64,000 nucleotides of DNA from the IMG/VR virus record IMGVR_UViG_3300036853_000446, positions 124,001-188,000 of that record; one strand, 5' to 3'. Position 1 is the stretch's first letter, and each line of letters begins with the position of its first letter. The position numbers were made by a program, and so were the translations under genes. Positions 48,865 to 63,763 of this stretch are shown here, one piece after another. The notes beneath the pieces are model-generated. The model had not been told where the DNA came from. It ran no database searches and saw only the letters and a list, made by a program, of their open reading frames with translations.

Positions 48865-51843
48865 TCACTCTCCGCGGCCCATGGCGAAATCATGCAGGTC
48901 TTCCGCGTCCTTCTTCTCCTGGTCCTGCCGCATGACGATCTCGAGGCGCCGCACGGCCTCCGCGTGGTTCGTCGGGTCGCGCTCCATGCCGATGAAATGC
49001 ATCCCCTCGAGCACGGCCGCGTGGAGCGTAGTACCCGAGCCGGCGTACATGTCCAGCACCGTGCCGCCTTTTTGTGTGACGAGCTTGACCAACCATCTGA
49101 TGAGCGCCAAGGGCTTCAACGTGGGGTGTTGAATTTCGAACTCGCCGCAGCCGGCTTCTTTACGGTTGGCCTTCGGAATATAGCGGAATGGCACGCCGCC
49201 CTGCGCGTCGAACTGAGTAAAGAACCGATCCACGCCGCCCTCGTCCGTGAGCCGGGTTCCGGCTTTGAACTGAAAATCAGCCATGTCCGTTCCCCTTTCC
49301 GCTAAGCCCTTGTTTTCAGTCGAGCCACCATTCGGGTGATGTCCTGACTCGACCCCCTGCTCCCGTAGCGCCCTGACGGGGCATCCTTCCACGCAAATCC
49401 AGTCTTCTACCGTTTCCAGGCCGTCGGGACCCGCGTAGCGCTGACTAGGCGTTTCCTTGGGCTGCCACCCGTCGTCGTTCATTATTCCGAGGGCCTCTAA
49501 CCGCCGCTTGCCACCGGGTGGGGTTTTGACGTCCTTCAGCCCGACGCGCTCACAGCCCGGGGCGTGAATGAACACAGCGTTCGGAGGCCATCTGCCTTTG
49601 CTAGCATCCTCGTCGGATTTGTCGGCCTCGAACTGGGTGAAGAAGCGAGAAGCACCGCCGGCATCCTGGTACGTGACATGATCATGCGCAGCCTGTGCAC
49701 CATCTGAGAAGGCGCCATTCTTCCCCTCGTAATTGAAATCGACGTGAACTTCCGAGGGGTCGTTGTTTGGGGAAGTGTATGAGCTGCGACGCTCGCCGCT
49801 CTGATCGTCGAGGGCCTTCACCGGACATCCTTCCACGCAGATCCAGTCGGCCACTTCCTCCTTCCCATCGAATCCAGCGTAACCGAGTTCGTCGCCTTCG
49901 ATGATGTTGTCCCCGTGCCACCCCCCTGTGTAGCCTGCCTTTGTACGGCCTTTACCCGTACAAAGAGACTTAGTGGTCACACGCTTAATGCCGACGCGCT
50001 GGCACCCCGCTCGACCTTCAACGTCTGGGACGTGTTCGAATACGGCGTTCGAAGGCCACCTGCCTTTGCTCTGGTCCTCGTCGGGTTTGTCGGCTTCGAT
50101 TTGGGTAAAAAACCGCGAGGCGCCCCCCTCATCGTCGTAGAGGGGGCCCTGGGTGTTGTGACCGAGATCCCCTCGTGTGTAACCACCACCACGGCTGTAC
50201 GTGGTTGGATAGTTGCCCGAGGATCGCCGATTACCGCTCTGATCGTCGAGGGCCTTCACCGGACATCCTTCCACGCATTCCCAGGCCTCCGTCTCTTCAA
50301 GGCCGTCCGAACCAACGTGGCTCGTTGTCTGCTGGTACTCAAAGCTCCCGTAGACGACCCTCGAGGGGGCCACATACTTCTTGTCCGGTACAGGTTCGCC
50401 TTTGGCTGCCGCCGCATGTGAACCTTTGATCCTCTTCGACCCGATGCGCTGGCAACCCGGGCGTCCGTCAGCATCGGGGACGTGCTCGAGCAGGACGTTG
50501 CTCGGCCACCTACCTTTGCTCGCATCCTGAGAATCTGCCTCGATCTGCGTGAAGAACCGCGAGGCCCCGCCGGCATCCGCGTAGACTTTGCTCAGGTGCG
50601 TTCGCTCCCCGAGGAACGTGGACGTAGGGTTCATCTCCGTGCCCGGGTGCTCGTGGCTCACGTCCGGGTCCGCGCGCCCCGTCAGCGTGCTCGGCCGATC
50701 GCCGCTCATGGCGTCTAGGGCACGTACAGGGCATCCTTCGGCGCATTCCCAGGCCTCGACCGTTTCGTTGCCGTCGTCATCGCCATAGCCACCACCACGT
50801 TCCTGAACCTGTGGCTGCCAGCCATCGTCGTTCATTTTGCCCAACGCACTATGCCGACGAGTTCCCTGCATGATGGCCGCAACCTTTTTTGACCCGACAC
50901 GCTGGCAACTCTCGGAATGTTCGAGCACGACGTTGCTCGGCCACCTTCCGCCGGCCTTGACCTCGTTGGCGCCGCTGAGGTCGCTGTCGTTCTTCCACGA
51001 TTTATCCCGGCTGCCGCCCTTCTCACGGATGGCATCGACGCCCTTCTTGTGGGTCTCGAAATCTTCCTGCGAGGCGTGCCGCACGCGGGTGGCGTCGATG
51101 TTGAGCCCGCCCGTCCCGTGCTTCAGGACGTTCGACGCGAGCGTGCCCTCGAGCGGCTTGCGGAAGACCAAAATTGGCTCAAATGCAGGCTTGAGTCCAC
51201 TCCCCCACCCAGACCAATGTTTGGCCTCGTCGGATGCTGGCGCGTACTGGTGGTGATATTTCTCGACCTGCTCTGGGTCCTTCATCCAAGGCCGAGAGAA
51301 CCCCACAGCGTGAGGGCCCGATTCGGAGAGATTTACGACGCTAGAGTTGTTACCCCGATCAGCAAATTCCTCGTGACCCGGCTTGATCCCAACCAGCTGC
51401 GTGCGCGTCTTCCCGAACCGATTGTCGATGCCTTTGCTTATATCATGGCTCTTTGGCATGCCCTGACCCTGAATCCATTGCAATATCGGATAGTTACGAC
51501 CGATCGTGTCGCGGCATTCGAACCCCGCCATTCGAAGCCCGATGCTAATCAGGTCGAACGTTCTTGTTCCTCCGAACGAGAGCACGTGACCGCCGGGCTT
51601 GAGCACGCGGTAGACCTCGCGCCAAACGGCAACGCTCGGAATGCTCCATTTTTGGCCCATGAAGTCATTTCCAGTGTCGAGCGTGCATCCGAGCACGTAC
51701 GCAAAGATGTCCTCCGGCGACGGGTCCTTGTTCCCGAGCCCATATGGCGGATCTACAACGGTGGCATCTATTGAATCCGAAGGAAGGTCACGGAGAAGGT
51801 CGAGACAATCACCGAGAAGAATCTGATCGAGAGGGAGGTCCAC
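48865..51843 (-). CDS. Beta-class N4/N6 DNA methyltransferase, 992 aa, with internal repeats
   Basis: DPPYG N-terminal; HPTLKP..LDMYAGSGTT C-terminal. Confidence 0.9.
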   Translation of the reverse strand: MDLPLDQILLGDCLDLLRDLPSDSIDATVVDPPYGLGNKDPSPEDIFAYVLGCTLDTGNDFMGQKWSIPSVAVWREVYRVLKPGGHVLSFGGTRTFDLISIGLRMAGFECRDTIGRNYPILQWIQGQGMPKSHDISKGIDNRFGKTRTQLVGIKPGHEEFADRGNNSSVVNLSESGPHAVGFSRPWMKDPEQVEKYHHQYAPASDEAKHWSGWGSGLKPAFEPILVFRKPLEGTLASNVLKHGTGGLNIDATRVRHASQEDFETHKKGVDAIREKGGSRDKSWKNDSDLSGANEVKAGGRWPSNVVLEHSESCQRVGSKKVAAIMQGTRRHSALGKMNDDGWQPQVQERGGGYGDDDGNETVEAWECAEGCPVRALDAMSGDRPSTLTGRADPDVSHEHPGTEMNPTSTFLGERTHLSKVYADAGGASRFFTQIEADSQDASKGRWPSNVLLEHVPDADGRPGCQRIGSKRIKGSHAAAAKGEPVPDKKYVAPSRVVYGSFEYQQTTSHVGSDGLEETEAWECVEGCPVKALDDQSGNRRSSGNYPTTYSRGGGYTRGDLGHNTQGPLYDDEGGASRFFTQIEADKPDEDQSKGRWPSNAVFEHVPDVEGRAGCQRVGIKRVTTKSLCTGKGRTKAGYTGGWHGDNIIEGDELGYAGFDGKEEVADWICVEGCPVKALDDQSGERRSSYTSPNNDPSEVHVDFNYEGKNGAFSDGAQAAHDHVTYQDAGGASRFFTQFEADKSDEDASKGRWPPNAVFIHAPGCERVGLKDVKTPPGGKRRLEALGIMNDDGWQPKETPSQRYAGPDGLETVEDWICVEGCPVRALREQGVESGHHPNGGSTENKGLAERGTDMADFQFKAGTRLTDEGGVDRFFTQFDAQGGVPFRYIPKANRKEAGCGEFEIQHPTLKPLALIRWLVKLVTQKGGTVLDMYAGSGTTLHAAVLEGMHFIGMERDPTNHAEAVRRLEIVMRQDQEKKDAEDLHDFAMGRGE
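49200..50950 (-). repeat. Four tandem ~140-150 aa modules in the methyltransferase
   Basis: GRWP(S/P)N x4, WxCxEGCPV x4, GGASRFF x3 plus GGVDRFF. Confidence 0.9.
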
Positions 51844-53530: not shown

Positions 53531-54826
53531 ATGAACAGAAAGGCAATGGCATTGAAGGTCGCGCGGGCGTGGTTGCGACGTGCTGCGGTCGTGCCCGATG
53601 ACCTCTTTGATCGATATTCACATCAATTGAAGGGGATCCTTTCCGGTCCCACCTCAGGGCCACGCAGCGTCGCACAGATGATTCGCAAGGGCATCGAGCC
53701 GTTGTTCCATCAGTTCGTGCATGATCTCCGCGAGACTGGGCTTACACGAAACCTCCTCGCGCATGTCGTTCGCAATCTCAATGCCGACCTGAAGATCCTG
53801 AAAGAGATTGAGACGAACCTCGAAAACCTGCACATCGCAATGACCTGCCCGCAGGGTGACGACAAATATTTGCCCGAGCACGAGATCAAGTGCCGCCTTG
53901 CCAGTGTGTTGAAAGATTGGTTCGACAACAGCGTCAAAACAATCGACCAAGCCCTTTTAGAGAACTGGTCGGTACGCTCCATAGGTGCAACCGGCCTCGT
54001 TGACCAGATCCTGAAGCAGGCCAGCCCGAAAGAATTGTCGATGCTCGGGGCTGTTGCGAACGGAGATGAGTCGACGGAGGTCCTTCAGCAACTGCGCGCC
54101 TTCAACGTGCGCGCTGTCGACCCCCTCGCCAAGAAACTCGTCATCAAAAACTGGCTCGGCGACGACAATTGGTGGCTCGGCCTGTTTGACCAAGTGAAGC
54201 GTAATCTCACCCACGAATCCGCCACCGATAGACCCGATGAGCAATTCGACCTTCACGGGATGAAGGTCGTCGTCGACGACGATACGGTGAACGCGGCTGA
54301 TATCCGTGCCTATGTTAAATACTTCGATATCGCCTATCAGAGCCTGAAGTCGAGGCGACTCCACTCGGCGTGGTACGGCGACATACTGATCGATTGCAAA
54401 GGCTGCGGGGGAGTCATCGATACGGGCGCAAATATTGGTGGCCACTTCAACGTCGGAAAGGATCAGGTCACGATCTTTGCTCGACCCGGCCCGACGATCA
54501 GCTACATTGTGGTACATGAGCTTGGACACCGGTACTGGTTCAAGAGCTTGTCGCGAGGCCAGCGCGGCAAGTTCGAATCCCTCGTAAAGGTGAAGGGCGA
54601 CGGCGCCAAGCCGGTCCTTCCCGTCTCTGACTACGGTGCTTCAAACATCGACGAAGCGTTTGCCGAGGCATTCGCCTGGTATGTCCTCCGCCGGAAGATG
54701 AACGCCGATCAAGAGGCTTCATTCAAGGCGGTCCTGCTCGACAAGGATCGCCGCTCCGTCACGTCCAAAACGGCGTCGAGATCGACGAGCGCCGCAAGAC
54801 GAGTCAGACGACCTCGATCTTCCTGA
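53531..54826 (+). CDS. Zincin metallopeptidase (LF/MPTase-like) with KVARAWL leader
   Basis: VVHELGHRYW, SDYGASNIDEAFAEAF. Confidence 0.8.
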   Translation: MNRKAMALKVARAWLRRAAVVPDDLFDRYSHQLKGILSGPTSGPRSVAQMIRKGIEPLFHQFVHDLRETGLTRNLLAHVVRNLNADLKILKEIETNLENLHIAMTCPQGDDKYLPEHEIKCRLASVLKDWFDNSVKTIDQALLENWSVRSIGATGLVDQILKQASPKELSMLGAVANGDESTEVLQQLRAFNVRAVDPLAKKLVIKNWLGDDNWWLGLFDQVKRNLTHESATDRPDEQFDLHGMKVVVDDDTVNAADIRAYVKYFDIAYQSLKSRRLHSAWYGDILIDCKGCGGVIDTGANIGGHFNVGKDQVTIFARPGPTISYIVVHELGHRYWFKSLSRGQRGKFESLVKVKGDGAKPVLPVSDYGASNIDEAFAEAFAWYVLRRKMNADQEASFKAVLLDKDRRSVTSKTASRSTSAARRVRRPRSS

Positions 54827-55604
54827 CCTTCACATTCCGTGGGTTGAACACGGCGATCTCCGGCACGCCTTGGACGAGGTTGGTGCCGTAGAAAAAGACC
54901 GAGTCATACCCTTTTGATCGCGCTTTACGAGCCTGGCTCGTGCTCTTCGTGACCAGCGGATTGCTGACAGTCACCGCCACCGTATAGACCTTCGGGCGGT
55001 ACGTTTTAGAATCCAGGCCGAGCGCGTCGAGGTTGTCATAAACATAGTCGGGAGCGCCCGTAGAGGAATTCATCAACTCGTCGAGCACCGAGTCCGTCTC
55101 GGACCCGAGGGGCTTCACTTTGCTGCCGATGATGTATGCGGCCAGGTCGCTCACGGCGTTGGGGTCGACGCCGAGGTAGTCCTCGAAGCCGACGAGGTCG
55201 ACATGTCCCTCTCCCGGGCCCGGATTCTCTCGCCAGAAACCGGCATCCTGGAGGGCGCGCGTCCACCCGCCGTCTCCGTGCTCGACGAGCATCTCGAGGA
55301 ATCTGCCGGCGGCCGGTTTCCTCCGCTTCAGGTCCGCGACGATCGTGGGCGAGAAGCCTATGTTACGGTTCGCGTAGGCGTACTCGCCGGCAACCCGCTT
55401 GCTCGGGGTCAGGAAGATCCCTCTGCCGTAATAGCTGTCGACCAGTTCGTCGCGGCTCTGACCCATGTCGAAGCTGCGAAAGAGCCGCGTCGTGCCGTGG
55501 TAAAGGGTCACCGGATGGCCCGTGCGAAGGCCCTCCAGATGGTACTCGACGAGAGGATCTACGGTCTCGCGCGCGACCCGGCGATCGTAATCGTAGGCCA
55601 GCAC
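54804..55604 (-). CDS. ADP-ribosyltransferase-like protein with YDYDRR leader
   Basis: LYHGT, GRGIFLT, A.EYA, GYDSV, EIAVFNP. Confidence 0.75.
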   Translation of the reverse strand: MLAYDYDRRVARETVDPLVEYHLEGLRTGHPVTLYHGTTRLFRSFDMGQSRDELVDSYYGRGIFLTPSKRVAGEYAYANRNIGFSPTIVADLKRRKPAAGRFLEMLVEHGDGGWTRALQDAGFWRENPGPGEGHVDLVGFEDYLGVDPNAVSDLAAYIIGSKVKPLGSETDSVLDELMNSSTGAPDYVYDNLDALGLDSKTYRPKVYTVAVTVSNPLVTKSTSQARKARSKGYDSVFFYGTNLVQGVPEIAVFNPRNVKVRKIEVV

Positions 55605-55608
55605 GGCT

Positions 55609-56577
55609 TCAAACCAAGAGCTGGAGAAGGTCCCGCTCCGATGGCAAGAGCAGCACCTTGCCGAGCGCCCCGCGGTCGACGGCGAGCTTCAGACGCTCGA
55701 TGACCTCGTCGTCCAGATACTGCTTCGCCAGGTTCCGCATGAGGCTACGGCGCTCGCCGTTCTTGTTGAGCCAAGCGAGATACCGCGATCGATTCATCCC
55801 GCCTTCGCCCCCGCTCCGATGACTCGCGTCGTTCCAGGCCGCGATAATCTGCTCCTCCGTCATGCCGCCGGCTTTGCCCTCGATATAGATCCAGGCCCAG
55901 GGCTCGCCTGCCGGGCCGAGCAACAGGGGGTTGCTCTTGAACTTCCGCTCGATCTCGTTCCACAGGGCCCTGTCGTCCGGTCTCGGTTCGTGCTCGTGGT
56001 GCACGCTGTCGCCGAATTCCGGGTCGTCACGGATCTCCTGCCGTCGTGACCGGCTGATGAGGACGTCCTTGATGCGCATCGTAAATCCGTTGGCCATGTA
56101 GTGAATGGCCTGGCCCACGTTGTTATCCCCGGAGAGCGCGTGTCTCTGAAGCATCGCCGTATAATTGTTCCAGGCCTCCTCCACGACGGGCAGCGGGATC
56201 TTCCGCTTGCCGGCCATCGAGAGACTAAAGATGCGCGAGCCAATGGCATTAGCGATCGGCCTGAGCTTCGACAGCGTGTTGTGTTTGATGAAGGGTCGCA
56301 GCTCTTCGATGGTCTTGCCTTCGATATCGCCCGGCGTGCCCGCCTCCTCCATGCTGATGAGCGCCTGCAGCCCGATCGACAGGTTCATGTCGTCCCGGGT
56401 GAAGGCCCGTCGGATGAACGCTCGTCGGGTGAGAGCCTTGTGGGTGGATACCTCCCGGGTCGAGGCCTCTCGCAGGAACGCCTGAACGATGCTGGCGATC
56501 CGGACTCGCACCGGCACGGCGGCCAGAATCGTTCGAGATAGCTGCAGGGCGTCGGAGGCGAGCGCTTGGCGGGTCAT
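55609..56577 (-). CDS. Possible divergent sigma-factor-like protein with RIAS..FLREAS N-terminus
   Basis: Region-2-like VEEAW..AIHYM...RIKDVL..RSRR; region-4-like GMTEEQII; weak resemblance. Confidence 0.45.
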   Translation of the reverse strand: MTRQALASDALQLSRTILAAVPVRVRIASIVQAFLREASTREVSTHKALTRRAFIRRAFTRDDMNLSIGLQALISMEEAGTPGDIEGKTIEELRPFIKHNTLSKLRPIANAIGSRIFSLSMAGKRKIPLPVVEEAWNNYTAMLQRHALSGDNNVGQAIHYMANGFTMRIKDVLISRSRRQEIRDDPEFGDSVHHEHEPRPDDRALWNEIERKFKSNPLLLGPAGEPWAWIYIEGKAGGMTEEQIIAAWNDASHRSGGEGGMNRSRYLAWLNKNGERRSLMRNLAKQYLDDEVIERLKLAVDRGALGKVLLLPSERDLLQLLV

Positions 56578-56601: not shown

Positions 56602-57720
56602 TTACGCGAGCTGAGACTGCTGCTGCTCCTGCTCTTTGGCCCGGCGTTTGATGTCGACCAAACTCTCTGCGGAGATTGCCTCACTCGCCAGCGTGTCTTC
56701 CCACGCGAGGTCAGCGTCATCCCGGCGAAGCGTCCGCACTCGTTGGTTGTCTTGAATGCAGGCGCCGTCGTTCAAGACGATCTCTTTATTGGATTTACGA
56801 TCGAGGGTCCGGAACAGGTTCCGCAGGTTATTCTCTACGATGCGCTGAAAATAGCGGGCAAAATTGACCTCCGTGACGCAGGCCGACGGCAGCACCCGAA
56901 CGCCGCGCTCTTTGAAATACCCGGACTCGTCGAGGACTCGAATATCGTCGCTGCGGTAGACGGCGTCGAGGGTCGTCGAGGCCCCCTTCACGGGGTTGGG
57001 CGCCTTGTCATAAGTCGCCATCATGGCTTGCCACTCGGGCCAATCGATACCGAGAAAGTCGAGCACCTCCTCCGTATCGAGCTGTGCGGGCAGGCGCTTG
57101 GCCGCCGATCGCATGAACTTCATGACAATATTGCCGCCAAAGATCTTGGTCCAATTGTCGCTGATCGCATCCTCGAGGGTCGTCCCGTATTTGAGGCGAT
57201 AACCGATGATCTTGGCGAGCTTTCCCGCGTATCTGGCCTCGAGTTGCGTCGGGGTTTGCGGCAGGTGCAGTGGCACATCGAACACGAAACCCTGCTCGAG
57301 TTCTTCGACAAGTTTCTTCGTCTCGGCAACGATAAAAACATCCAACCCGGGTATCACCGATTTCAGGAAGCCCTTCTTGGCCGCCCGAATAAACACCAGC
57401 TCCCGGGACTCGAGAAGGAGATCGACATCAGAGAAACGATACCTGCTCGAGCTGAGCGAGTGCGAGCCCTCGACGGGTACCGAGAGGGCCTCCCAGCGCC
57501 AGCGAATTGTGTTTGACCAGGTCGAGAGGGTGATCCCGAGATAGGCGATGGCCTGATCGCGCGTAATGATCTCCGGGCGCCGAAACGTGCGAAGCACCCC
57601 TCGGTACCAGAGATGGTGGGCGATCTGCCACGTGCGCCAAACGTCGCAGGCGGCCGCCTTCTCGATGGTCGCCCCGTAGAGCCTCAACAACTCATCAACG
57701 TCCCTCGGCAGACCGCGCAT
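56602..57720 (-). CDS. Hypothetical regulator: two HTH-like repeats and sigma2-like segments
   Basis: DQAIAYLGITLSTW and EEVLDFLGIDWPEW; FARYFQRIVENNLRNLFR. Confidence 0.5.
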   Translation of the reverse strand: MRGLPRDVDELLRLYGATIEKAAACDVWRTWQIAHHLWYRGVLRTFRRPEIITRDQAIAYLGITLSTWSNTIRWRWEALSVPVEGSHSLSSSRYRFSDVDLLLESRELVFIRAAKKGFLKSVIPGLDVFIVAETKKLVEELEQGFVFDVPLHLPQTPTQLEARYAGKLAKIIGYRLKYGTTLEDAISDNWTKIFGGNIVMKFMRSAAKRLPAQLDTEEVLDFLGIDWPEWQAMMATYDKAPNPVKGASTTLDAVYRSDDIRVLDESGYFKERGVRVLPSACVTEVNFARYFQRIVENNLRNLFRTLDRKSNKEIVLNDGACIQDNQRVRTLRRDDADLAWEDTLASEAISAESLVDIKRRAKEQEQQQSQLA

Positions 57721-57883
57721 CGGTGAATGACCTCCCGTGGGTGGTGTACCAACCCACATGTTCTTCACCCCTCCGAGCCCCACGACGATGTCCTTCGACC
57801 GTCGCGTTCCCACTTGTCACCGGGATGATGGTGAGCACCACACGTATCCGAACTCGTCGGAGCCCGTCAACACAAACTCGAGC

Positions 57884-58447
57884 ATGAGTGAAATCGACAA
57901 GGTCATGGCAGAGGGACGCGCACTCACGCGATCACTCGCGGTGATCGAAACAGGGGCCTCGATCGCGGACGCACGACTCTCCTGTTTGGTTTGCCTCGAG
58001 CAGCATGTTGCCAACAGTGTGGAAACCATTGCGATCGACTGTGCGCTTCGGAAGATCTGTGGATTGGCTTCGACAACATACAAAGACGCACACCTCTCCG
58101 AGGCGCCCACCTCTTTGGAAGAGTTTCTCCTCCACGAGGGAGTGGTTCGTTGGCTCGAGTGGGCGACCAATGAACCGTCGACCCTCATGTTGGTCGAGCC
58201 CCAGGGAACCCGGAGCGTCAGTGTGTTGGACCGAATGGCCCTGACGCAGTGGATCGAGGGCGTGGAGCATCTGCGGCGCGGCAACGAAACGGAGGCGCAG
58301 CGGTATTTCCGCCGCGCCGTCACGCTCGGACGATCCTACGGGACGCCGAGCAACCCGGTCATCCAGTGGACGTACGCCGCGAGTTTCTTCCCCGAGCTTG
58401 ATTCCAACCCTCAGGACAGTTCTCCACAGACTGTGGGGGACTTGTGA
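57884..58447 (+). CDS. hypothetical protein
   Basis: MSEIDK start; alternative ATG at 57758 lies 10 nt after TGGTGTA. Confidence 0.6.
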   Translation: MSEIDKVMAEGRALTRSLAVIETGASIADARLSCLVCLEQHVANSVETIAIDCALRKICGLASTTYKDAHLSEAPTSLEEFLLHEGVVRWLEWATNEPSTLMLVEPQGTRSVSVLDRMALTQWIEGVEHLRRGNETEAQRYFRRAVTLGRSYGTPSNPVIQWTYAASFFPELDSNPQDSSPQTVGDL

Positions 58448-58502: not shown

Positions 58503-59036
58503 TCACTCGGCAGCCTCGGCGTAGCTCACTGTCGACTCGGCGTTTGAGACGTTGAGATCACGCCGTGCAACGCGCCGCCGTCTCTGAGCTTCGGCGTTTT
58601 GTCGACGGCGCTTTTCGAGACGCTCCGGGTCGGCTTTGATCTTCGCCCAACGGCTGGCGTCATATCCCGTTTCGCGAGCCCACTTGCGCTTGTTGATCTT
58701 GTCGAAAGGCTCAAAGCCGAAAAGGCATCTGCCCAGCGAACCGAGATCTTTTGCGAGAAGCCGCCCCTGTCGATAAGCCTTCACTTTCTGCCAGGCGATA
58801 TCCTTTTCCTCTTCGGTCGCGATCCGTGTCAAACCCAAATAGTATCCGCTGATTTCGTACCAGATCTCGACGGGAAGCTCGATGAGCGGGGTGTCCCTGA
58901 ACAAACTCTCGAGGCGCGCGATTTGCTTCGTCTGCCGTTCCGCTCTCGGGGTCTGGCTGTCCTGGACGACAAATCGTGGGGTGCCCATGAATCTTCGAGG
59001 TTGTCGCTCGGTTTTTGGAGTAGGCTTCGATCGCAT
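58503..59036 (-). CDS. basic hypothetical protein next to repeat region
   Basis: Arg/Lys-rich C-terminus. Confidence 0.6.
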   Translation of the reverse strand: MRSKPTPKTERQPRRFMGTPRFVVQDSQTPRAERQTKQIARLESLFRDTPLIELPVEIWYEISGYYLGLTRIATEEEKDIAWQKVKAYRQGRLLAKDLGSLGRCLFGFEPFDKINKRKWARETGYDASRWAKIKADPERLEKRRRQNAEAQRRRRVARRDLNVSNAESTVSYAEAAE

Positions 59037-59077
59037 TGTTCGTTCCTCGAACCGGCGGTCCCGCAAAGGCCGCCGGT

Positions 59078-59296
59078 TCACTTTTGTGATTGGTGTTTCT
59101 GTCCACGGAGATCCGTCGTCATGTGCGCCCGCACGCCGTCAGGCCCAACTGCAGCGAGCTGACGGAGGCCCATCCGAAACGCGAGACGAGCGAGACGGTG
59201 CCGGTGAAGGTAGGGGTGTTCGTCGGCGAGCTGGTCCATCAGTCGCGTCAGCTCAGCGTCGAGCTTCAGCGATTGGCGTTCGGTGGAAGTGCGCAT
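59078..59296 (-). CDS. RHH-like DNA-binding protein
   Basis: QSLKLDAEL..LMDQL..RHRLARLAF; CGGTGTA 11 nt upstream. Confidence 0.6.
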   Translation of the reverse strand: MRTSTERQSLKLDAELTRLMDQLADEHPYLHRHRLARLAFRMGLRQLAAVGPDGVRAHMTTDLRGQKHQSQK

Positions 59297-59559
59297 GTCC
59301 ACCGGTTACACCGAGTCCGCGGACCATTCTTTCGAGCACACGCACTTCGATAAACCCGAACGCCCATCTCCTCAGAGGTGTGTGGACGTCATGGGACGCC
59401 GCGCTCGACTGAACATCACCGGAGGCCACCCGGTCCCCTGGGTACGTCATCGAGCCGATCCGTTATCGACGAGGCCGGTCAATCACCATGTCGACGAGCT
59501 GGCACGGCCAAAACGGATTTTCTCCAGCCTCTTCAGCCGGCATTTCCCGGCCACTCGGC

Positions 59560-60263
59560 TGTCATCCCACCCATTAGATCCGTTTGTGTCGACAAAATGG
59601 AAAACGACAAAGAGGGAGAGTACCTGTGGGATGACACAGTAGGGATGACAGGGGAATGACAGGGGCGGATTGGAGGCCACCAAGATCATCTATGACGGGG
59701 GGATGACAACCAGTTGACCGGTATAAATGGGGGACAAATTGGATTGGATCGCGATCTGCTGAGGTGTGTCAAAACCAGTTGACCGGTGTGAATGGAGGTT
59801 TGGATTGGATCAGATCTGTAGAGGTGTGTCCAACCAATTAACCGGTAGGAAATGGGGTTTGGGTTGGACCACGATCCGCTGAGTCATACACAGTCAGCCT
59901 CATTGTCATCCCTACTCCATCATCCCGCATGTATCCCTCTTTGGTTATCGGGATGACACGGAGGACGGGAAGAACAGACGGAAGGAGCCCAAGGTATTGT
60001 CAACCAGTTGACCGGTGTGAGTGGTGTTTGGAAGGGATCGGATCGCGATCTGCATGCCCTACCAACCTCTCTGTCATCCCTACTCCATCATCCCGCATGT
60101 ATCTCTCTTTGGTTATCGGGATGACACGGAGGACGGCTGCGCCGCAGAAGGGAACGGAGGACAAAAGGCGGGTGGACGGACGACGCGAGCCCGAAGGAGC
60201 GAGCGGAGGGTGCTCTCAGACAAAAATCGGGCCCGTAGCGAGCCCGAAGGAGCGAGCGGAGGG
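59560..60263. repeat. Non-coding multi-family repeat region, origin-like
   Basis: AACCAGTTGACCGGT-type units x4; 65-bp direct repeat x2; GGGATGACA in both orientations; 26-bp direct repeat x2. Confidence 0.85.
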
Positions 60264-60527
60264 CGGTGGGTAGGGACCCGGCGCGCGCCCACATCACCAT
60301 ACACGGCCACGTCATGCGCGTCCGAGCCACACGGTGTCGCTCCGCCCCGGGATGCCATGTTGCCGGGCCGTAGCGACCCTCAGGCGCGTCTTTGACGGTG
60401 CCGCTCGCCGGAGACCCGGCGAAGGCCTCAGAGGCGCTCAGCTCTCCGCTTCCGGGCGAAGCCGCCCAACCGATCTTGGACGGAGATGTTCAGGGTTGAC
60501 CTGCGAGCCTGACAGGCTCAGGGTCTG

Positions 60528-60722
60528 ATGATGTCATCGCGTCAATCCGAGACCCCATTCGATCCGAAAGCTCGAGCCGCTGAGAAGCAGGCGTCAAGAG
60601 ACCGGGATGCGGCTGACTTGGCGTCCGGGGCAAAGACTCGTGAACAGCTATGGCGGGAGAACACATTGCTGCCAGCCCGGATGACGTCGTTCGACATTCG
60701 CTCGATTCCAGTTCCGGACTGA
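60528..60722 (+). CDS. small hypothetical protein
   Basis: ORF after repeat region. Confidence 0.5.
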   Translation: MMSSRQSETPFDPKARAAEKQASRDRDAADLASGAKTREQLWRENTLLPARMTSFDIRSIPVPD

Positions 60723-60773
60723 GCGCCGAGCGGCAGTGAGCAAGACCAAAGGTTTGTGGTAGGCTCGCGCCCA

Positions 60774-61097
60774 ATGATCTCGACGACGCGCCTCAAGCTC
60801 GACGACGTGAATGGACGACCGATGGTGCTCTTGAGCGACGTGCCGAGCCCTCTCCGAATCGGGGACCCATTGGGGCTGCGCTTCCGGATCGCGCGCCAGA
60901 ACGGCACCCGTCACGAGGTCCTCGACGTCAACGGGCAGTTCCGGGTGAGCGCCGTCGGCTTCGACCTCTCGGTGACGCCCCGCCGGCAGCTCCTGACGGT
61001 CGAGGCAATCGGCAAGCCGCCGACGTGGGTCAGCGTGAAGAAGCCGCCCTCTAGGGCCCCTCTAGGGCCCGCAATCAGCCCCCGCACCCCGGTATGA
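60774..61097 (+). CDS. beta-rich hypothetical protein
   Basis: Clean ORF. Confidence 0.6.
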   Translation: MISTTRLKLDDVNGRPMVLLSDVPSPLRIGDPLGLRFRIARQNGTRHEVLDVNGQFRVSAVGFDLSVTPRRQLLTVEAIGKPPTWVSVKKPPSRAPLGPAISPRTPV

Positions 61098-62650: not shown

Positions 62651-63763
62651 CTACTTCCTTTTGGTCGGCTCGGGCTTTTTGGCGTCGGCTTCCACAGCGA
62701 GGGTTTCGGCAGCGGTCGAAATCGAAGCGGCGGCCTGTGCAATCGAATCGGCGGCCTGTGCAATAGACTCTGCCGCCTCGGTGCGGCCCGCTATATTGTC
62801 CGCTCGAGGTGGCTTGTTCGCCTTGAGCTTGGCTGTAGCAGGGCCCACTTTCACTTTAGCGGGGCCCACTAAGGTTGGCTCCGCCCTTATGACGGACGTC
62901 ACCGCGACAGGTTCCACTGTGATCGGCTTTACCACCTTGGCGGGCTCAGTCCTTATGGTCGGCGCCACTGCGGCGGGCGCCACTGCGACGGGCTCCACTG
63001 CGACGGGCTTGACCACCTTGGTGGGCTCTGCCCTTATGGTCGGCTCCACCACGGCGGGCTCCACTGCGACGGGCTCAACCACGGCGGGCTCCCGGGTCCA
63101 GCCTCCGGAAATCTGTAGCGAGGCATCTTCCTCGTTGTCCTGATTCCAACGACGGAGCACGGCGTTCGACAGCTTGACGGTTTCCGCGTGGATACTGTCC
63201 TCGACGTTCTGGGACCACGTGCCCAGGATGGCCAATCCAATGATGGACACGATTGCCGTGAACAAGCCGAACGCGGTGCAGTTCATGGCTTCGGAGATAC
63301 CCTCAGCGAGGATCCTCGATTTTTGCGTGTAGTCTACGCTCTCGGCACCCACGGAACCAAACGATTTTATGAGCCCCAGGATGGTCCCAAAGAGTCCGGA
63401 AAGCATTGCGAGATTCGCATAGAGGGCGAGGTACCGCACGCCCCGATGGATGAGCGGCAGCTCGTACAGCGCCACCTCGTCCATCCCCGCTTCGAAGGCT
63501 TTGATTCCGCGGGAGGCTCTCGCGAGTCCGCCGCGGGTGATGCGCCCAAGGGGCGTCTTGGCGGCTGCAGCAAGTCGAATGGCTCGGCTCCAGTCGCCGG
63601 CCTCGACGAGCTTCGTAATCGTTGCCGTAAAAACGTTGACCTCCTGATATGCCGAGAACAAGTAGAGGGTCTTCCAACAGAAGCCGTAAGCCACGGCGCC
63701 GAGCCAGAAAAGAATGGGCCACATCGCCCAGCCTCCCGCCCTGAAATGCTCGAGGAGGGTCAT
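62651..63763 (-). CDS. MotA/TolQ/ExbB proton-channel protein with repetitive Pro/Val/Ala tail
   Basis: GGWAMWPI, GLFGTILGLIKSF, GISEAMNCTAFGL; ~25-aa EP-rich repeats. Confidence 0.9.
   Translation of the reverse strand: MTLLEHFRAGGWAMWPILFWLGAVAYGFCWKTLYLFSAYQEVNVFTATITKLVEAGDWSRAIRLAAAAKTPLGRITRGGLARASRGIKAFEAGMDEVALYELPLIHRGVRYLALYANLAMLSGLFGTILGLIKSFGSVGAESVDYTQKSRILAEGISEAMNCTAFGLFTAIVSIIGLAILGTWSQNVEDSIHAETVKLSNAVLRRWNQDNEEDASLQISGGWTREPAVVEPVAVEPAVVEPTIRAEPTKVVKPVAVEPVAVAPAAVAPTIRTEPAKVVKPITVEPVAVTSVIRAEPTLVGPAKVKVGPATAKLKANKPPRADNIAGRTEAAESIAQAADSIAQAAASISTAAETLAVEADAKKPEPTKRK

What the first reader, a model, noticed from the sequence alone, without database searches (positions are those of the whole stretch)
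59560..60263. Origin-like non-coding region with four interlocking repeat families
(1) ~62-bp units starting AACCA[GA]TT[GA]ACCGGT at 59708, 59773, 59832 and 60002, with GGATTGGATC and GAGGTGTGTC elements. (2) A 65-bp direct repeat at 59904-59968 and 60072-60136, each bounded by inverted TGTCATCCC/GGGATGACA. (3) Extra GGGATGACA copies at 59560 (inverted), 59628, 59642 and 59700. (4) A 26-bp repeat at 60185 and 60238. Flanking genes diverge, and an RHH-like and a basic protein are adjacent. It resembles an iteron-type origin or partition site.
Basis: partly seen in the sequence, partly recalled or inferred. Interest (0 to 1): 0.6.

Follow-up and report, generated by a model that had tools for sequence, protein, structure and literature searches.

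The report
Binding-site array beside its binder gene
A 1.45-kb non-coding gap in a 407-kb soil phage holds eleven copies of a 9-bp box that changes together with the small protein encoded next to it in related phages; it most likely controls transcription beside two sigma-like genes, and nothing tested here shows it to be a replication origin.

Summary
All four repeat families are real and non-random. The window is part of a 407,634-bp soil virus record whose ends overlap by 139 bp. Syntenic relatives simplify the picture. The ancestral element is an array of 9-bp boxes (GGGATGACA; 11 copies here, 5-12 in relatives), arranged as opposed double sites. In relatives it lies between two divergent CGGTGTA-type promoters. 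This phage added a ~170-bp tandem duplication and private ~60-bp units.

Box sequence co-varies with the adjacent 177-aa helical, basic protein. L062 and L066 are 91% and 74% identical in flanking proteins but 24% in this protein, and the box switches to GGTGTGAC. So binder and boxes form an exchangeable specificity cassette. Downstream lie a sigma-like protein with inserted winged helices and a second, weakly sigma-like protein. An RHH-like 72-aa gene is optional.

The origin or partition reading is not supported:
- GC skew is uniform and cannot place an origin.
- Helicase and polymerase genes lie ~190 kb away.
- The genome has no ParA-type ATPase.
- The binder has no initiator-like fold.

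The tests are weak, so an origin is not excluded. The best reading is an autoregulated transcription-control array (about 0.45). The clade is known only from metagenomes.

The parts
59560..59568 (-). Box nearest the binder gene (GGGATGACA read on the - strand), with the conserved flank GGGATGACAGCC
   Evidence: the alignment shows the box and flank invariant in 5 loci
59572..59611 (.). Most AT-rich 40 bp of the locus (62.5% AT, top 0.27% of the genome), lying between the last box and the double site
59628..59661 (+). Double site (boxes at 59628 and 59642, 14 bp start to start) plus the variant box GGAATGACA at 59653
   Evidence: 14-15 bp double sites recur in L062-L065 and L067
59700..59708 (+). 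Single box abutting the first ~60-bp unit
59708..59894 (+). Three tandem ~60-bp units (59708, 59773, 59832). The 15-bp head AACCAGTTGACCGGT is conserved; the rest has drifted. Each unit holds GATC pairs. The units are private to this phage
   Evidence: no viral contig holds more than one copy of the head
59895..59968 (.). 74-bp repeat, copy 1. It corresponds to the ancestral module of one box facing a double site (boxes at 59904 -, 59918 - variant, 59950 +)
60002..60171 (+). Second copy of the ~170-bp tandem duplication: unit 4 (60002-60062) plus 74-bp repeat copy 2 (60063-60136; boxes at 60072 -, 60086 - variant, 60118 +)
   Evidence: a bridging unitig supports it
60185..60263 (+). Two identical 26-bp repeats (60185-60210 and 60238-60263), each holding two GCGAGC words, around an A-rich spacer. 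Equivalent paired repeats lie at -80 to -145 of the 113-aa gene in relatives, whatever the box type
   Evidence: D6; L064 D2; L066 D2/D4
59307..59313 (-). CGGTGTA promoter-like motif, 11 nt before the ATG at 59296
59078..59296 (-). 72-aa RHH-like gene, optional: present in 4 of 10 loci and not tied to the box type
59049..59079 (-). Conserved GC hairpin just upstream of the binder's ribosome-binding site, preceded by an A-run. Read on the + strand it looks like an intrinsic terminator
   Evidence: 13 pairs, 6 with compensatory changes in 9 loci
58503..59036 (-). 177-aa binder candidate: helical bundle plus a long basic C-terminal helix; it co-varies with the box
57737..58447 (+). Conserved 236-aa gene, convergent with the binder gene; function unknown
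56602..57720 (-). 372-aa sigma-like protein: sigma domain 2-like core with two excisionase/MerR-type winged helices
55609..56577 (-). 322-aa conserved protein, weakly sigma-like
60774..61097 (+). 107-aa, most conserved neighbour (64-91% identical between loci), probably a beta-sandwich domain; transcribed away from the array

Best explanation
The region is a composite transcription-control region. Its conserved core is an array of 9-bp boxes (GGGATGACA) bound by the 177-aa helical, basic protein encoded immediately beside it.

Ancestral layout. Opposed groups of boxes, including 14-15-bp double sites, sit between two divergent CGGTGTA-type promoters about 550 bp apart. One promoter drives the binder gene through a 5' leader that carries a conserved hairpin. 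In some phages, this one included, the transcript first passes a small RHH-like gene. The other promoter drives a highly conserved 107-aa gene.

Proposed mechanism. Multimers of the binder occupy the boxes, probably bridging the opposed groups. This sets the output of its own promoter and possibly of the divergent one. The whole module sits next to a sigma-like gene pair on the same strand. Binder and boxes are exchanged together between otherwise closely related phages, so they act as a specificity (immunity-like) determinant.

In this phage the array was enlarged by a ~170-bp tandem duplication and by three extra ~60-bp units. The conserved 15-bp head of those units is probably a second, lineage-specific binding site.

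Shown: the repeats, their conservation, the synteny, the binder/box covariation, the promoter-like motif and the hairpin covariation.

Inferred: that the binder binds the boxes, that the outcome is transcriptional control, and its direction (repression or activation).
For: - Box enrichment and confinement: 8 exact copies against 0.58 expected; 8 of 10 genome copies lie here; in relatives 5-12 boxes lie in the gap against 0-0.25 per kb outside it.
- The same architecture is found in the five box-A loci, the window and L062-L065.
- The box type changes in L066, L067, L068 and L072.
- Covariation: L062 against L066 is 91% (113-aa protein), 74% (403-aa protein) and 24% (binder), and the box switches from GGGATGAC to GGTGTGAC. 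L068 has an intermediate binder (32-41%) and an intermediate box, AGGATGAC.
- CGGTGTA lies upstream of 27 of 201 genes against 3.6 expected. It usually ends 10-14 nt before the start codon. It is present before the binder or RHH gene and, in 5 relatives, 11 nt before the 113-aa gene's ATG.
- The hairpin has 6 compensatory pairs.
- Neighbours are regulators. For the 403-aa protein, sigma domain 2 fills most of the top 30 VIA rows (Z 6-7.2), and 18 of 21 family members hit Pfam Sigma70_r2 below threshold. For the 322-aa protein, the nearest Atlas clusters that carry a Pfam family are sigma70 r2/r4. The 72-aa protein is RHH-like.
- The binder model is confident enough to read: pLDDT 79, with a basic helix at residues 137-169.
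Against: - No binding or expression data exist. There are no RNA runs.
- The nearest box lies about 50 nt upstream of the CGGTGTA core and does not overlap it, so simple occlusion is not the mechanism.
- Eight to twelve sites in two opposed groups, two- to three-fold GATC enrichment and an AT-rich spacer would equally suit an origin-type nucleoprotein complex.
- The binder has no recognisable DNA-binding fold or relative.
- The sigma-like assignments are below curated thresholds.
- In the window itself the second promoter is displaced by ~460 bp of extra sequence and lacks CGGTGTA.
- That CGGTGTA is a promoter is itself an inference.
Confidence: 0.45

Rival explanations
1. Replication origin. 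The boxes are initiator-binding sites, the 177-aa protein is a new kind of origin-binding protein, the AT-rich spacer or the GATC-rich centre is the unwinding or regulated region, and the flanking promoters activate the origin by transcription.
For: - Many sites in both orientations with double sites.
- GATC count of 10 in 600 bp against a mean of 3.9 (top 1% of the genome), and two- to three-fold enrichment in the gap of 7 of 8 relatives.
- A 40-bp stretch of 62.5% AT, top 0.27% of the genome.
- A cognate binder/site cassette is exchanged as initiator-origin modules are in lambdoid phages (the lambdoid comparison is from my own knowledge).
- The uniform strand skew is compatible with unidirectional replication, which would leave no turning point.
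Against: - There is no skew inflection here or anywhere else.
- The DnaB-type helicase (377.7 kb) and PolA (374 kb) lie ~190 kb away on a 407.5-kb circle.
- The binder shows no Rep, winged-helix or AAA+ similarity.
- Box orientation and spacing are unlike classical iterons.
- The neighbours are regulators, not replisome genes.
Confidence: 0.2
2. Partition (centromere-like) site bound by the RHH-like 72-aa protein and/or the basic protein, for maintenance as a plasmid-like prophage.
For: - Repeat arrays lie upstream of small DNA-binding protein genes.
- The genome encodes a tyrosine recombinase.
- The contig ends overlap, which is consistent with a circular map.
Against: - There is no ParA-type (AAA_31) ATPase anywhere in the genome.
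- The only ParB_N match lies at 282 kb.
- The adjacent 403-aa and 322-aa proteins look sigma-like, not tubulin- or actin-like.
- The RHH-like gene is missing from 6 of 10 loci that still keep an array.
- No relative was found in plasmid records or in bacterial genome assemblies.
Confidence: 0.05
3. Replication fork trap (RTP/Tus-like terminus). Two opposed groups of polar binding sites lie next to the autoregulated gene of a small terminator protein.
For: - Opposed orientation of the box groups, with double sites on each side of a short centre. This recalls the inverted repeats IRI and IRII next to the rtp gene in Bacillus subtilis (my own knowledge, not tested here).
- The locus lies about 190 kb from the helicase and polymerase genes, with a half-circle of 204 kb.
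Against: - There is no bidirectional skew pattern. With the terminus fixed at 183 kb the model explains 0.000 of the residual skew.
- The position of the origin is unknown.
- The binder model gave no convincing match to any solved fold: best Z 5.8, all generic helical bundles.
Confidence: 0.04
4. Packaging (pac) site recognised by a small-terminase-like protein, with repeated boxes flanking a cleavage region.
For: - The size of the binder (177 aa) and the boxes flanking a central segment resemble SPP1-type pac sites (my own knowledge).
- Binder/site cassettes vary between relatives, as terS genes do.
Against: - The only terminase-like signal is a weak TerL_ATPase match in a 670-aa ORF ~83 kb away. 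Nothing else was found.
- The neighbourhood holds regulators and nucleotide-metabolism genes, not a packaging module.
- The contig ends do not coincide with this locus.
Confidence: 0.03
5. Structured RNA genes or a degenerate CRISPR-like array.
For: - 28-nt heads at 59-65-bp spacing superficially resemble a CRISPR array.
- The genome does carry true CRISPR arrays elsewhere.
- The 74-bp repeat folds with z scores of -1.8 to -3.2.
Against: - The stretches between heads are themselves homologous (units 65-78% identical), so they are not spacers.
- The heads are unrelated to the genome's CRISPR repeats.
- Rfam gives no match at gathering threshold, and only a chance snoRNA hit at E 0.56.
- The units show no excess folding (z +0.4 and 0.0).
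- The 74-bp fold is only the 9-bp inverted boxes around a 37-nt loop.
Confidence: 0.03

Closest known systems
Multi-operator genetic switches of phages (Mu O1-O3 with the c repressor; lambda OR/OL)
   Same: Many copies of a short site, in both orientations, lie between divergent transcription units. The cognate small regulator is encoded at the edge of the array. The regulator and its sites are exchanged as one specificity module between relatives. The comparison with Mu and lambda is from my own knowledge.
   Different: The binder has no detectable HTH repressor fold or family. The boxes lie upstream of the presumed promoter cores and do not overlap them. No lysogeny is shown. The array adjoins sigma-like genes.
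Iteron-type origins (plasmid Rep_3 replicons, lambda ori, P1 oriR)
   Same: Clustered repeated binding sites, a cognate binder gene next door, GATC enrichment and an AT-richer stretch.
   Different: Sites are in mixed orientation with irregular spacing. There is no Rep-like protein, the replisome genes are ~190 kb away, and there is no skew signal.
Plasmid centromeres with RHH centromere-binding proteins (type Ib/II par loci)
   Same: A repeat array upstream of a small RHH-like gene.
   Different: There is no partition NTPase. The RHH-like gene is optional, while an array remains in 8 of 10 loci.
Bacillus subtilis RTP terminus (IRI/IRII next to rtp)
   Same: Opposed double sites flank a short centre, next to the gene of a small DNA-binding protein (the comparison is from my own knowledge).
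   Different: There is no evidence of bidirectional replication or of a terminus at this place.

Membership tests
Iteron-type replication origin | Several initiator-binding repeats in the same orientation at regular spacing | tested here: not met
   The boxes occur in both orientations at spacings of 11, 14 and 47 bp and more. Only the private ~60-bp units are direct repeats (59-65 bp spacing), and they are absent from all relatives.
Iteron-type replication origin | Adjacent gene for a recognisable initiator (Rep winged-helix, lambda O-like, AAA+) | tested here: not met
   The 177-aa protein has no Pfam or PHROG match, no solved-structure sequence match and no fold match (Foldseek E of 1 or worse, VIA Z of 5.8 or less).
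Iteron-type replication origin | AT-rich unwinding element beside the repeats | tested here: inconclusive
   The best 40 bp is 62.5% AT, top 0.27% of the genome. That is modest in absolute terms, and it lies where a promoter is also expected.
Iteron-type replication origin | Strand-composition or coverage inflection at the site | tested here: not met
   Cumulative GC skew falls monotonically. No origin/terminus pair explains more than shuffled data do: 4.2% against a shuffled mean of 3.8% and a maximum of 12%. Coverage could not be tested because the runs are held only as contigs.
Iteron-type replication origin | Supports autonomous replication | not testable with these tools
   Needs a minireplicon experiment.
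Partition site (centromere) of a par locus | Cognate NTPase (ParA, ParM or TubZ) in the same operon | tested here: not met
   AAA_31 gives no match in the genome. The neighbouring 403-aa and 322-aa proteins resemble sigma factors.
Partition site (centromere) of a par locus | Repeated sites next to the gene of a centromere-binding protein | tested here: inconclusive
   A repeat array and an RHH-like gene are present, but the RHH-like gene is absent from 6 of 10 loci.
Phage operator array / genetic switch | Repeated sites between divergent promoters | tested here: met
   In relatives the boxes lie between CGGTGTA motifs that face the binder gene and the 113-aa gene. In the window only the binder-side motif is present. 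That CGGTGTA is a promoter is inferred from its enrichment and position.
Phage operator array / genetic switch | Cognate regulator encoded beside the sites and co-varying with them | tested here: met
   Binder identity tracks box type, while the flanking proteins do not.
Phage operator array / genetic switch | Sites overlap the promoter core, and regulation is demonstrated | tested here: inconclusive
   The nearest box ends about 50 nt upstream of CGGTGTA. Regulation cannot be tested with these tools.
CRISPR array | Identical repeats separated by unrelated spacers | tested here: not met
   The inter-head segments are homologous to each other, and the heads differ from the genome's true CRISPR repeats.
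pac site with small terminase | Binder gene adjacent to the large terminase gene | tested here: not met
   The only weak TerL-like match lies ~83 kb away. Searches found nothing.

The most novel reading that the evidence does not exclude
The binder-box cassette is the replication origin of this clade of huge soil phages, together with a new family of origin-binding protein. It would drive unidirectional replication, consistent with the uniform strand skew that ignores gene orientation. Its exchange between close relatives would define incompatibility groups among co-infecting huge phages.
Probability: 0.2. Interest if true: 0.7.

Novelty: new member of a known kind. Interest (0 to 1): 0.45.

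Why it matters
Huge phages are known almost only from metagenomes, and very little is known about their cis-acting control elements. This locus offers a concrete pair to test: a 9-bp box and a 177-aa protein that has no known fold or family. Natural specificity variants (GGGATGACA, GGTGTGAC, AGGATGACAG, GGAATGACAG) occur in otherwise near-identical backgrounds, and the pair sits beside sigma-like genes. Suppose it is a switch. Then it gives a way into the regulatory logic of a huge-phage clade, shows that immunity-like specificity modules are exchanged there, and yields orthogonal DNA-binding parts. Suppose instead it is the origin. Then it would be among the first origins of a huge phage to be defined. 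The genome-wide CGGTGTA motif and the uniform skew are leads of their own.

Tried and rejected
- Single-protein scans of viral contigs with the 192-aa, 403-aa and 328-aa proteins found nothing.
- A scan for the 15-mer head gave only single chance hits.
- Profile scans with the 403-aa family in viral contigs and in bacterial genomes found nothing.
- tblastn of the binder against deposited phages and plasmids, and of the 403-aa protein against phages, found nothing.
- The sigma-70-type promoter scan found no sites.
- Rfam found nothing apart from the tRNAs elsewhere in the window.
- The resemblance of the unit heads (CCGGTGTG, CCGGTATA) to the CGGTGTA motif was examined and dropped. One-mismatch variants of a 7-mer are expected about four times in this much sequence, and the motif carries no flanking information.
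- I looked for a DNA word shared by the loci that carry the RHH-like gene and found no convincing candidate.
- A by-eye match of CTGT-N8-ACAG at 59624-59639 to a LexA box was dropped because relatives do not keep it.
- A by-eye resemblance of the binder's basic helix to a bZIP basic region, together with the TGAC core of the boxes, remains an untested lead.
- Sequencing runs: only the source soil sample holds the locus, there is no RNA, and the runs are held as contigs. So neither coverage nor transcription could be read.
- My first gene caller, based on GC3, was too noisy. It was replaced by a codon-usage caller, which is still approximate.
- No complex prediction was sent, because no protein-protein contact is claimed.
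- No alternative genetic code was used.

Full report
**Where the window lies.** The window is bases 124001-188000 of a 407,634-bp IMG/VR virus record, from a soil metagenome. The record is labelled linear and 86% complete. Its two ends overlap by 139 bp with 138 identities, so the assembly closes on itself: either a circular map or terminal redundancy. The window carries 30 tRNA genes. It also encodes a RecD/Dda-like helicase, an NAD-dependent ligase, ribonucleotide reductase, GroEL and a large DNA methyltransferase. This is a huge phage. Neither the binder nor the 403-aa protein next to the repeat region has a relative in deposited phage records, and the binder has none in deposited plasmids.

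**The observation.**
- GGGATGACA occurs 8 times in the window against 0.58 expected, and no shuffle reached 8. The whole genome has only 10 copies.
- With three variants (GGAATGACA at 59653; CATCATCCC at 59918 and 60086) there are 11 boxes.
- The four AACCA[GA]TT[GA]ACCGGT heads are the only ones in the genome.
- The 65-bp repeat extends to 74 nt at 95% identity.
- The 26-bp repeat is exact.
- An independent unitig of the source run bridges 59939-60101 with no differences, so the duplication is real in the reads.

**Gene boundaries.** A codon-usage gene call and protein conservation in relatives give this local map:
- 322-aa gene (-), 403-aa gene (-) and 236-aa gene (+);
- 192-aa ORF (-), whose true start is the ATG at 59036, giving 177 aa;
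- 74-aa ORF (-), with a probable start at 59296, giving 72 aa;
- a non-coding gap up to 60773;
- a 107-aa gene (+), the best conserved of all at 64-91% identity;
- a convergent ~158-aa gene (-), then MotA/ExbB and dCTP deaminase genes.

**Relatives simplify the 'four interlocking families'.** The 192-aa and 403-aa proteins have homologues on syntenic metagenomic contigs. That gives ten independent loci, because L071 equals L064. Each locus has a gap at the same position.

In L062-L065 the gap holds 5-12 boxes of the same sequence, against 0-0.25 per kb outside it. The layout is shared. Read in the direction of the binder gene it is:
- one box facing a double site (14-15 bp start to start);
- a GATC-rich centre of 50-130 bp;
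- two single boxes and a second double site in the opposite orientation;
- a 65-70-bp AT-richer spacer;
- one last box with the invariant flank GGGATGACAGCC.

The window has this same layout plus two additions. One is a ~170-bp tandem duplication (59832-60001 against 60002-60171, 131 of 170 identical). The other addition is the ~60-bp units themselves. They have no counterpart in any relative or in any other viral contig. Within the units only the 15-bp head is strictly kept (15 of 15 in three copies), while the rest has drifted to 65-78% identity. That pattern is expected if the head is a second binding site.

The 26-bp repeats belong to a third element class: paired GCGAGC-containing repeats around an A-rich spacer. 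In relatives these lie at -80 to -145 of the 107-aa gene, whatever the box type.

**Who binds the boxes.** In more distant loci the dominant repeated word in the gap changes:
- GGTGTGAC in L066 and L067, with the 14-bp double site kept in L067;
- AGGATGACAG in L068;
- GGAATGACAG in L072;
- no TGAC-type box in L069.

Only the protein at the binder position tracks this. L062 and L066 are 91% identical in the 107-aa protein and 74% in the 403-aa protein, but 24% in the binder. L068 has an intermediate binder (32-41%) and an intermediate box. L069 has an unrelated protein at that position. The RHH-like gene is 67-72% identical between the window and L066 despite their different boxes, and it is absent from six loci.

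The inference is that the 177-aa protein is the box binder, and that binder and boxes form a cassette exchanged between otherwise close relatives. The AlphaFold model (pLDDT 79.4, pTM 0.61) is a helical bundle followed by a long basic helix at residues 137-169. The most conserved sequence lies there and just before it. No family, solved structure or fold matches.

**Promoters and the leader.** CGGTGTA lies upstream of 27 of 201 genes against 3.6 expected (z 12.5). It usually ends 10-14 nt before the start codon, with no Shine-Dalgarno sequence between. In relatives that lack the RHH-like gene, it sits about 70 nt before the binder's ATG, ahead of a hairpin. So it behaves as a promoter element and not as a translation signal.

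In the window it lies at 59307-59313 (-), 11 nt before the ATG of the RHH-like gene. In five relatives it also lies exactly 11 nt before the ATG of the 107-aa gene. The box array therefore lies between two divergent promoters, with the nearest box about 50 nt upstream of the core. The window has ~460 bp of extra sequence on the 107-aa side and lacks that second CGGTGTA.

A GC hairpin preceded by an A-run stands between the promoter and the binder's ribosome-binding site in nine loci. It has 13 pairs, 6 of them kept through changes on both sides.

**Neighbours.**
- The 403-aa protein (model pLDDT 81) matches sigma-factor domain 2 in most of the top 30 VIA rows (Z 6-7.2).
- Eighteen of its 21 family members hit Pfam Sigma70_r2 below threshold, and 4 hit HTH_17.
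- Foldseek gives local matches to excisionase/MerR-type winged helices.
- For the 322-aa protein, the nearest Atlas clusters that carry a Pfam family are sigma70 r2/r4, at weak scores.
- The profile of the 72-aa family best matches the RHH domain of NikR (E 0.042).
- The 107-aa family also occurs as repeats in giant proteins that carry Ig-like domains, so it is probably not a DNA binder.

**Tests of the origin or partition reading.**
- Cumulative GC skew falls monotonically over the whole genome.
- After regression on coding strand (r = 0.045) the skew is a constant of about -0.028. No origin/terminus pair explains more than block-shuffled data do. Skew thus gives no support, but it also cannot locate an origin anywhere on this genome.
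- The DnaB-type helicase and PolA lie at 374-378 kb, ~190 kb away.
- The only ParB_N match is at 282 kb, and there is no ParA-type ATPase.
- A tyrosine recombinase lies at 323.6 kb.
- A weak TerL-like match lies ~83 kb away.
- Some features would suit an origin. GATC is enriched (10 in 600 bp against a mean of 3.9; two- to three-fold in 7 of 8 relatives). The most AT-rich 40 bp reaches 62.5% AT.
- No RNA or raw-read data exist for the locus.

**Conclusion.** Its regulatory neighbourhood points to transcription control, meaning autoregulation of the binder's own promoter with possible effects on the divergent gene and the sigma-like genes alongside. I put that at about 0.45.

An origin with a new kind of origin-binding protein remains possible (about 0.2). 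Partition, fork-trap, packaging-site and RNA readings are each unlikely. The remainder (about 0.2) is for functions I have not thought of.

Noticed in passing
window 16248-40650: Thirty tRNA genes, all on the - strand, interspersed with ORFs over about 24 kb. They include several isoacceptors for Leu, Arg, Pro and Thr.
   Followed up: no
genome ends (G000:C1:1-139 and 407496-407634), outside the window: The two contig ends overlap by 139 bp with 138 identities. The record is labelled linear and 86% complete, but it closes on itself: a circular map or terminal redundancy of about 407.5 kb.
   Followed up: partly
whole genome G000: GC skew is uniformly about -0.028 on the + strand and is independent of gene orientation (r = 0.045). 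There is no origin/terminus pattern. This is unusual, and it is compatible with unidirectional or strand-asymmetric replication.
   Followed up: partly
G000:C1 about 250.7, 259.8-260.5, 265.6-266.3 and 291.6-292.8 kb, outside the window: CRISPR-like arrays with a period of 72-76 bp. One 37-nt repeat, GTCGTGGTCGGGTGGGCTCCACGCAGCCTCTCAAATC, occurs in 4 + 10 + 10 copies. A second repeat type, containing CTCAGAACGGCAGCGTGGTGCCTACC, occurs 13 times. Degenerate copies lie at 294 and 311.6 kb. Cas genes and spacer targets were not examined.
   Followed up: partly
genome-wide; in the window for example 59307-59313 (-): The motif (C)CGGTGTA lies upstream of 27 of 201 genes against 3.6 expected, usually 10-14 nt before the start codon with no Shine-Dalgarno sequence. 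Of 101 genome copies, 56 lie in the 17% of the genome that is non-coding. It is probably the phage's promoter element for leaderless or short-leader mRNAs.
   Followed up: partly
window 56602-57720 (-) and 55609-56577 (-): Two tandem conserved genes look like divergent sigma factors. The first has a sigma domain 2-like core with two excisionase/MerR-type winged helices, one of them inserted in the core. The second has only weak support.
   Followed up: partly
window 59049-59089: The conserved hairpin upstream of the binder gene reads on the opposite (+) strand as an intrinsic terminator: stem, then (A/G)CTTTTGTG(A/G), kept in the five loci compared. A transcript of the convergent 236-aa gene (57737-58447 +) would then run antisense across the whole binder gene and stop here. 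This hints at control by convergent transcription. It was not tested.
   Followed up: partly
window 60264-60773: About 460 bp of GC-rich sequence has no counterpart in relatives. It separates the GCGAGC repeats from the 107-aa gene, and the CGGTGTA that precedes that gene in five relatives is missing here. The stretch holds a 64-aa ORF (60528-60722 +) with no homologue in the relatives, and a near-match to the motif on the opposite strand at 60306.
   Followed up: partly
window 62651-63763 (-): The MotA/ExbB-like protein is 370 aa here against 195-210 aa in relatives. The extra C-terminal half is a proline/valine/glutamate-rich repeat of the PAVVEPVAVEP type.
   Followed up: no
L069:2708-4447 and L072:551-2284: In two relatives the dCTP deaminase gene is about 578 aa long, with a LAGLIDADG domain between two DCD halves. 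This is probably an intein or homing-endonuclease insertion.
   Followed up: no
window 54804-55604 (-) and 48865-51843 (-): An ART-PolyVal ADP-ribosyltransferase domain protein and a 992-aa DNA methyltransferase lie just downstream of the sigma-like genes. Such proteins are typical of early or injected 'polyvalent' functions. The local GATC enrichment in the array could relate to a phage methylase.
   Followed up: no
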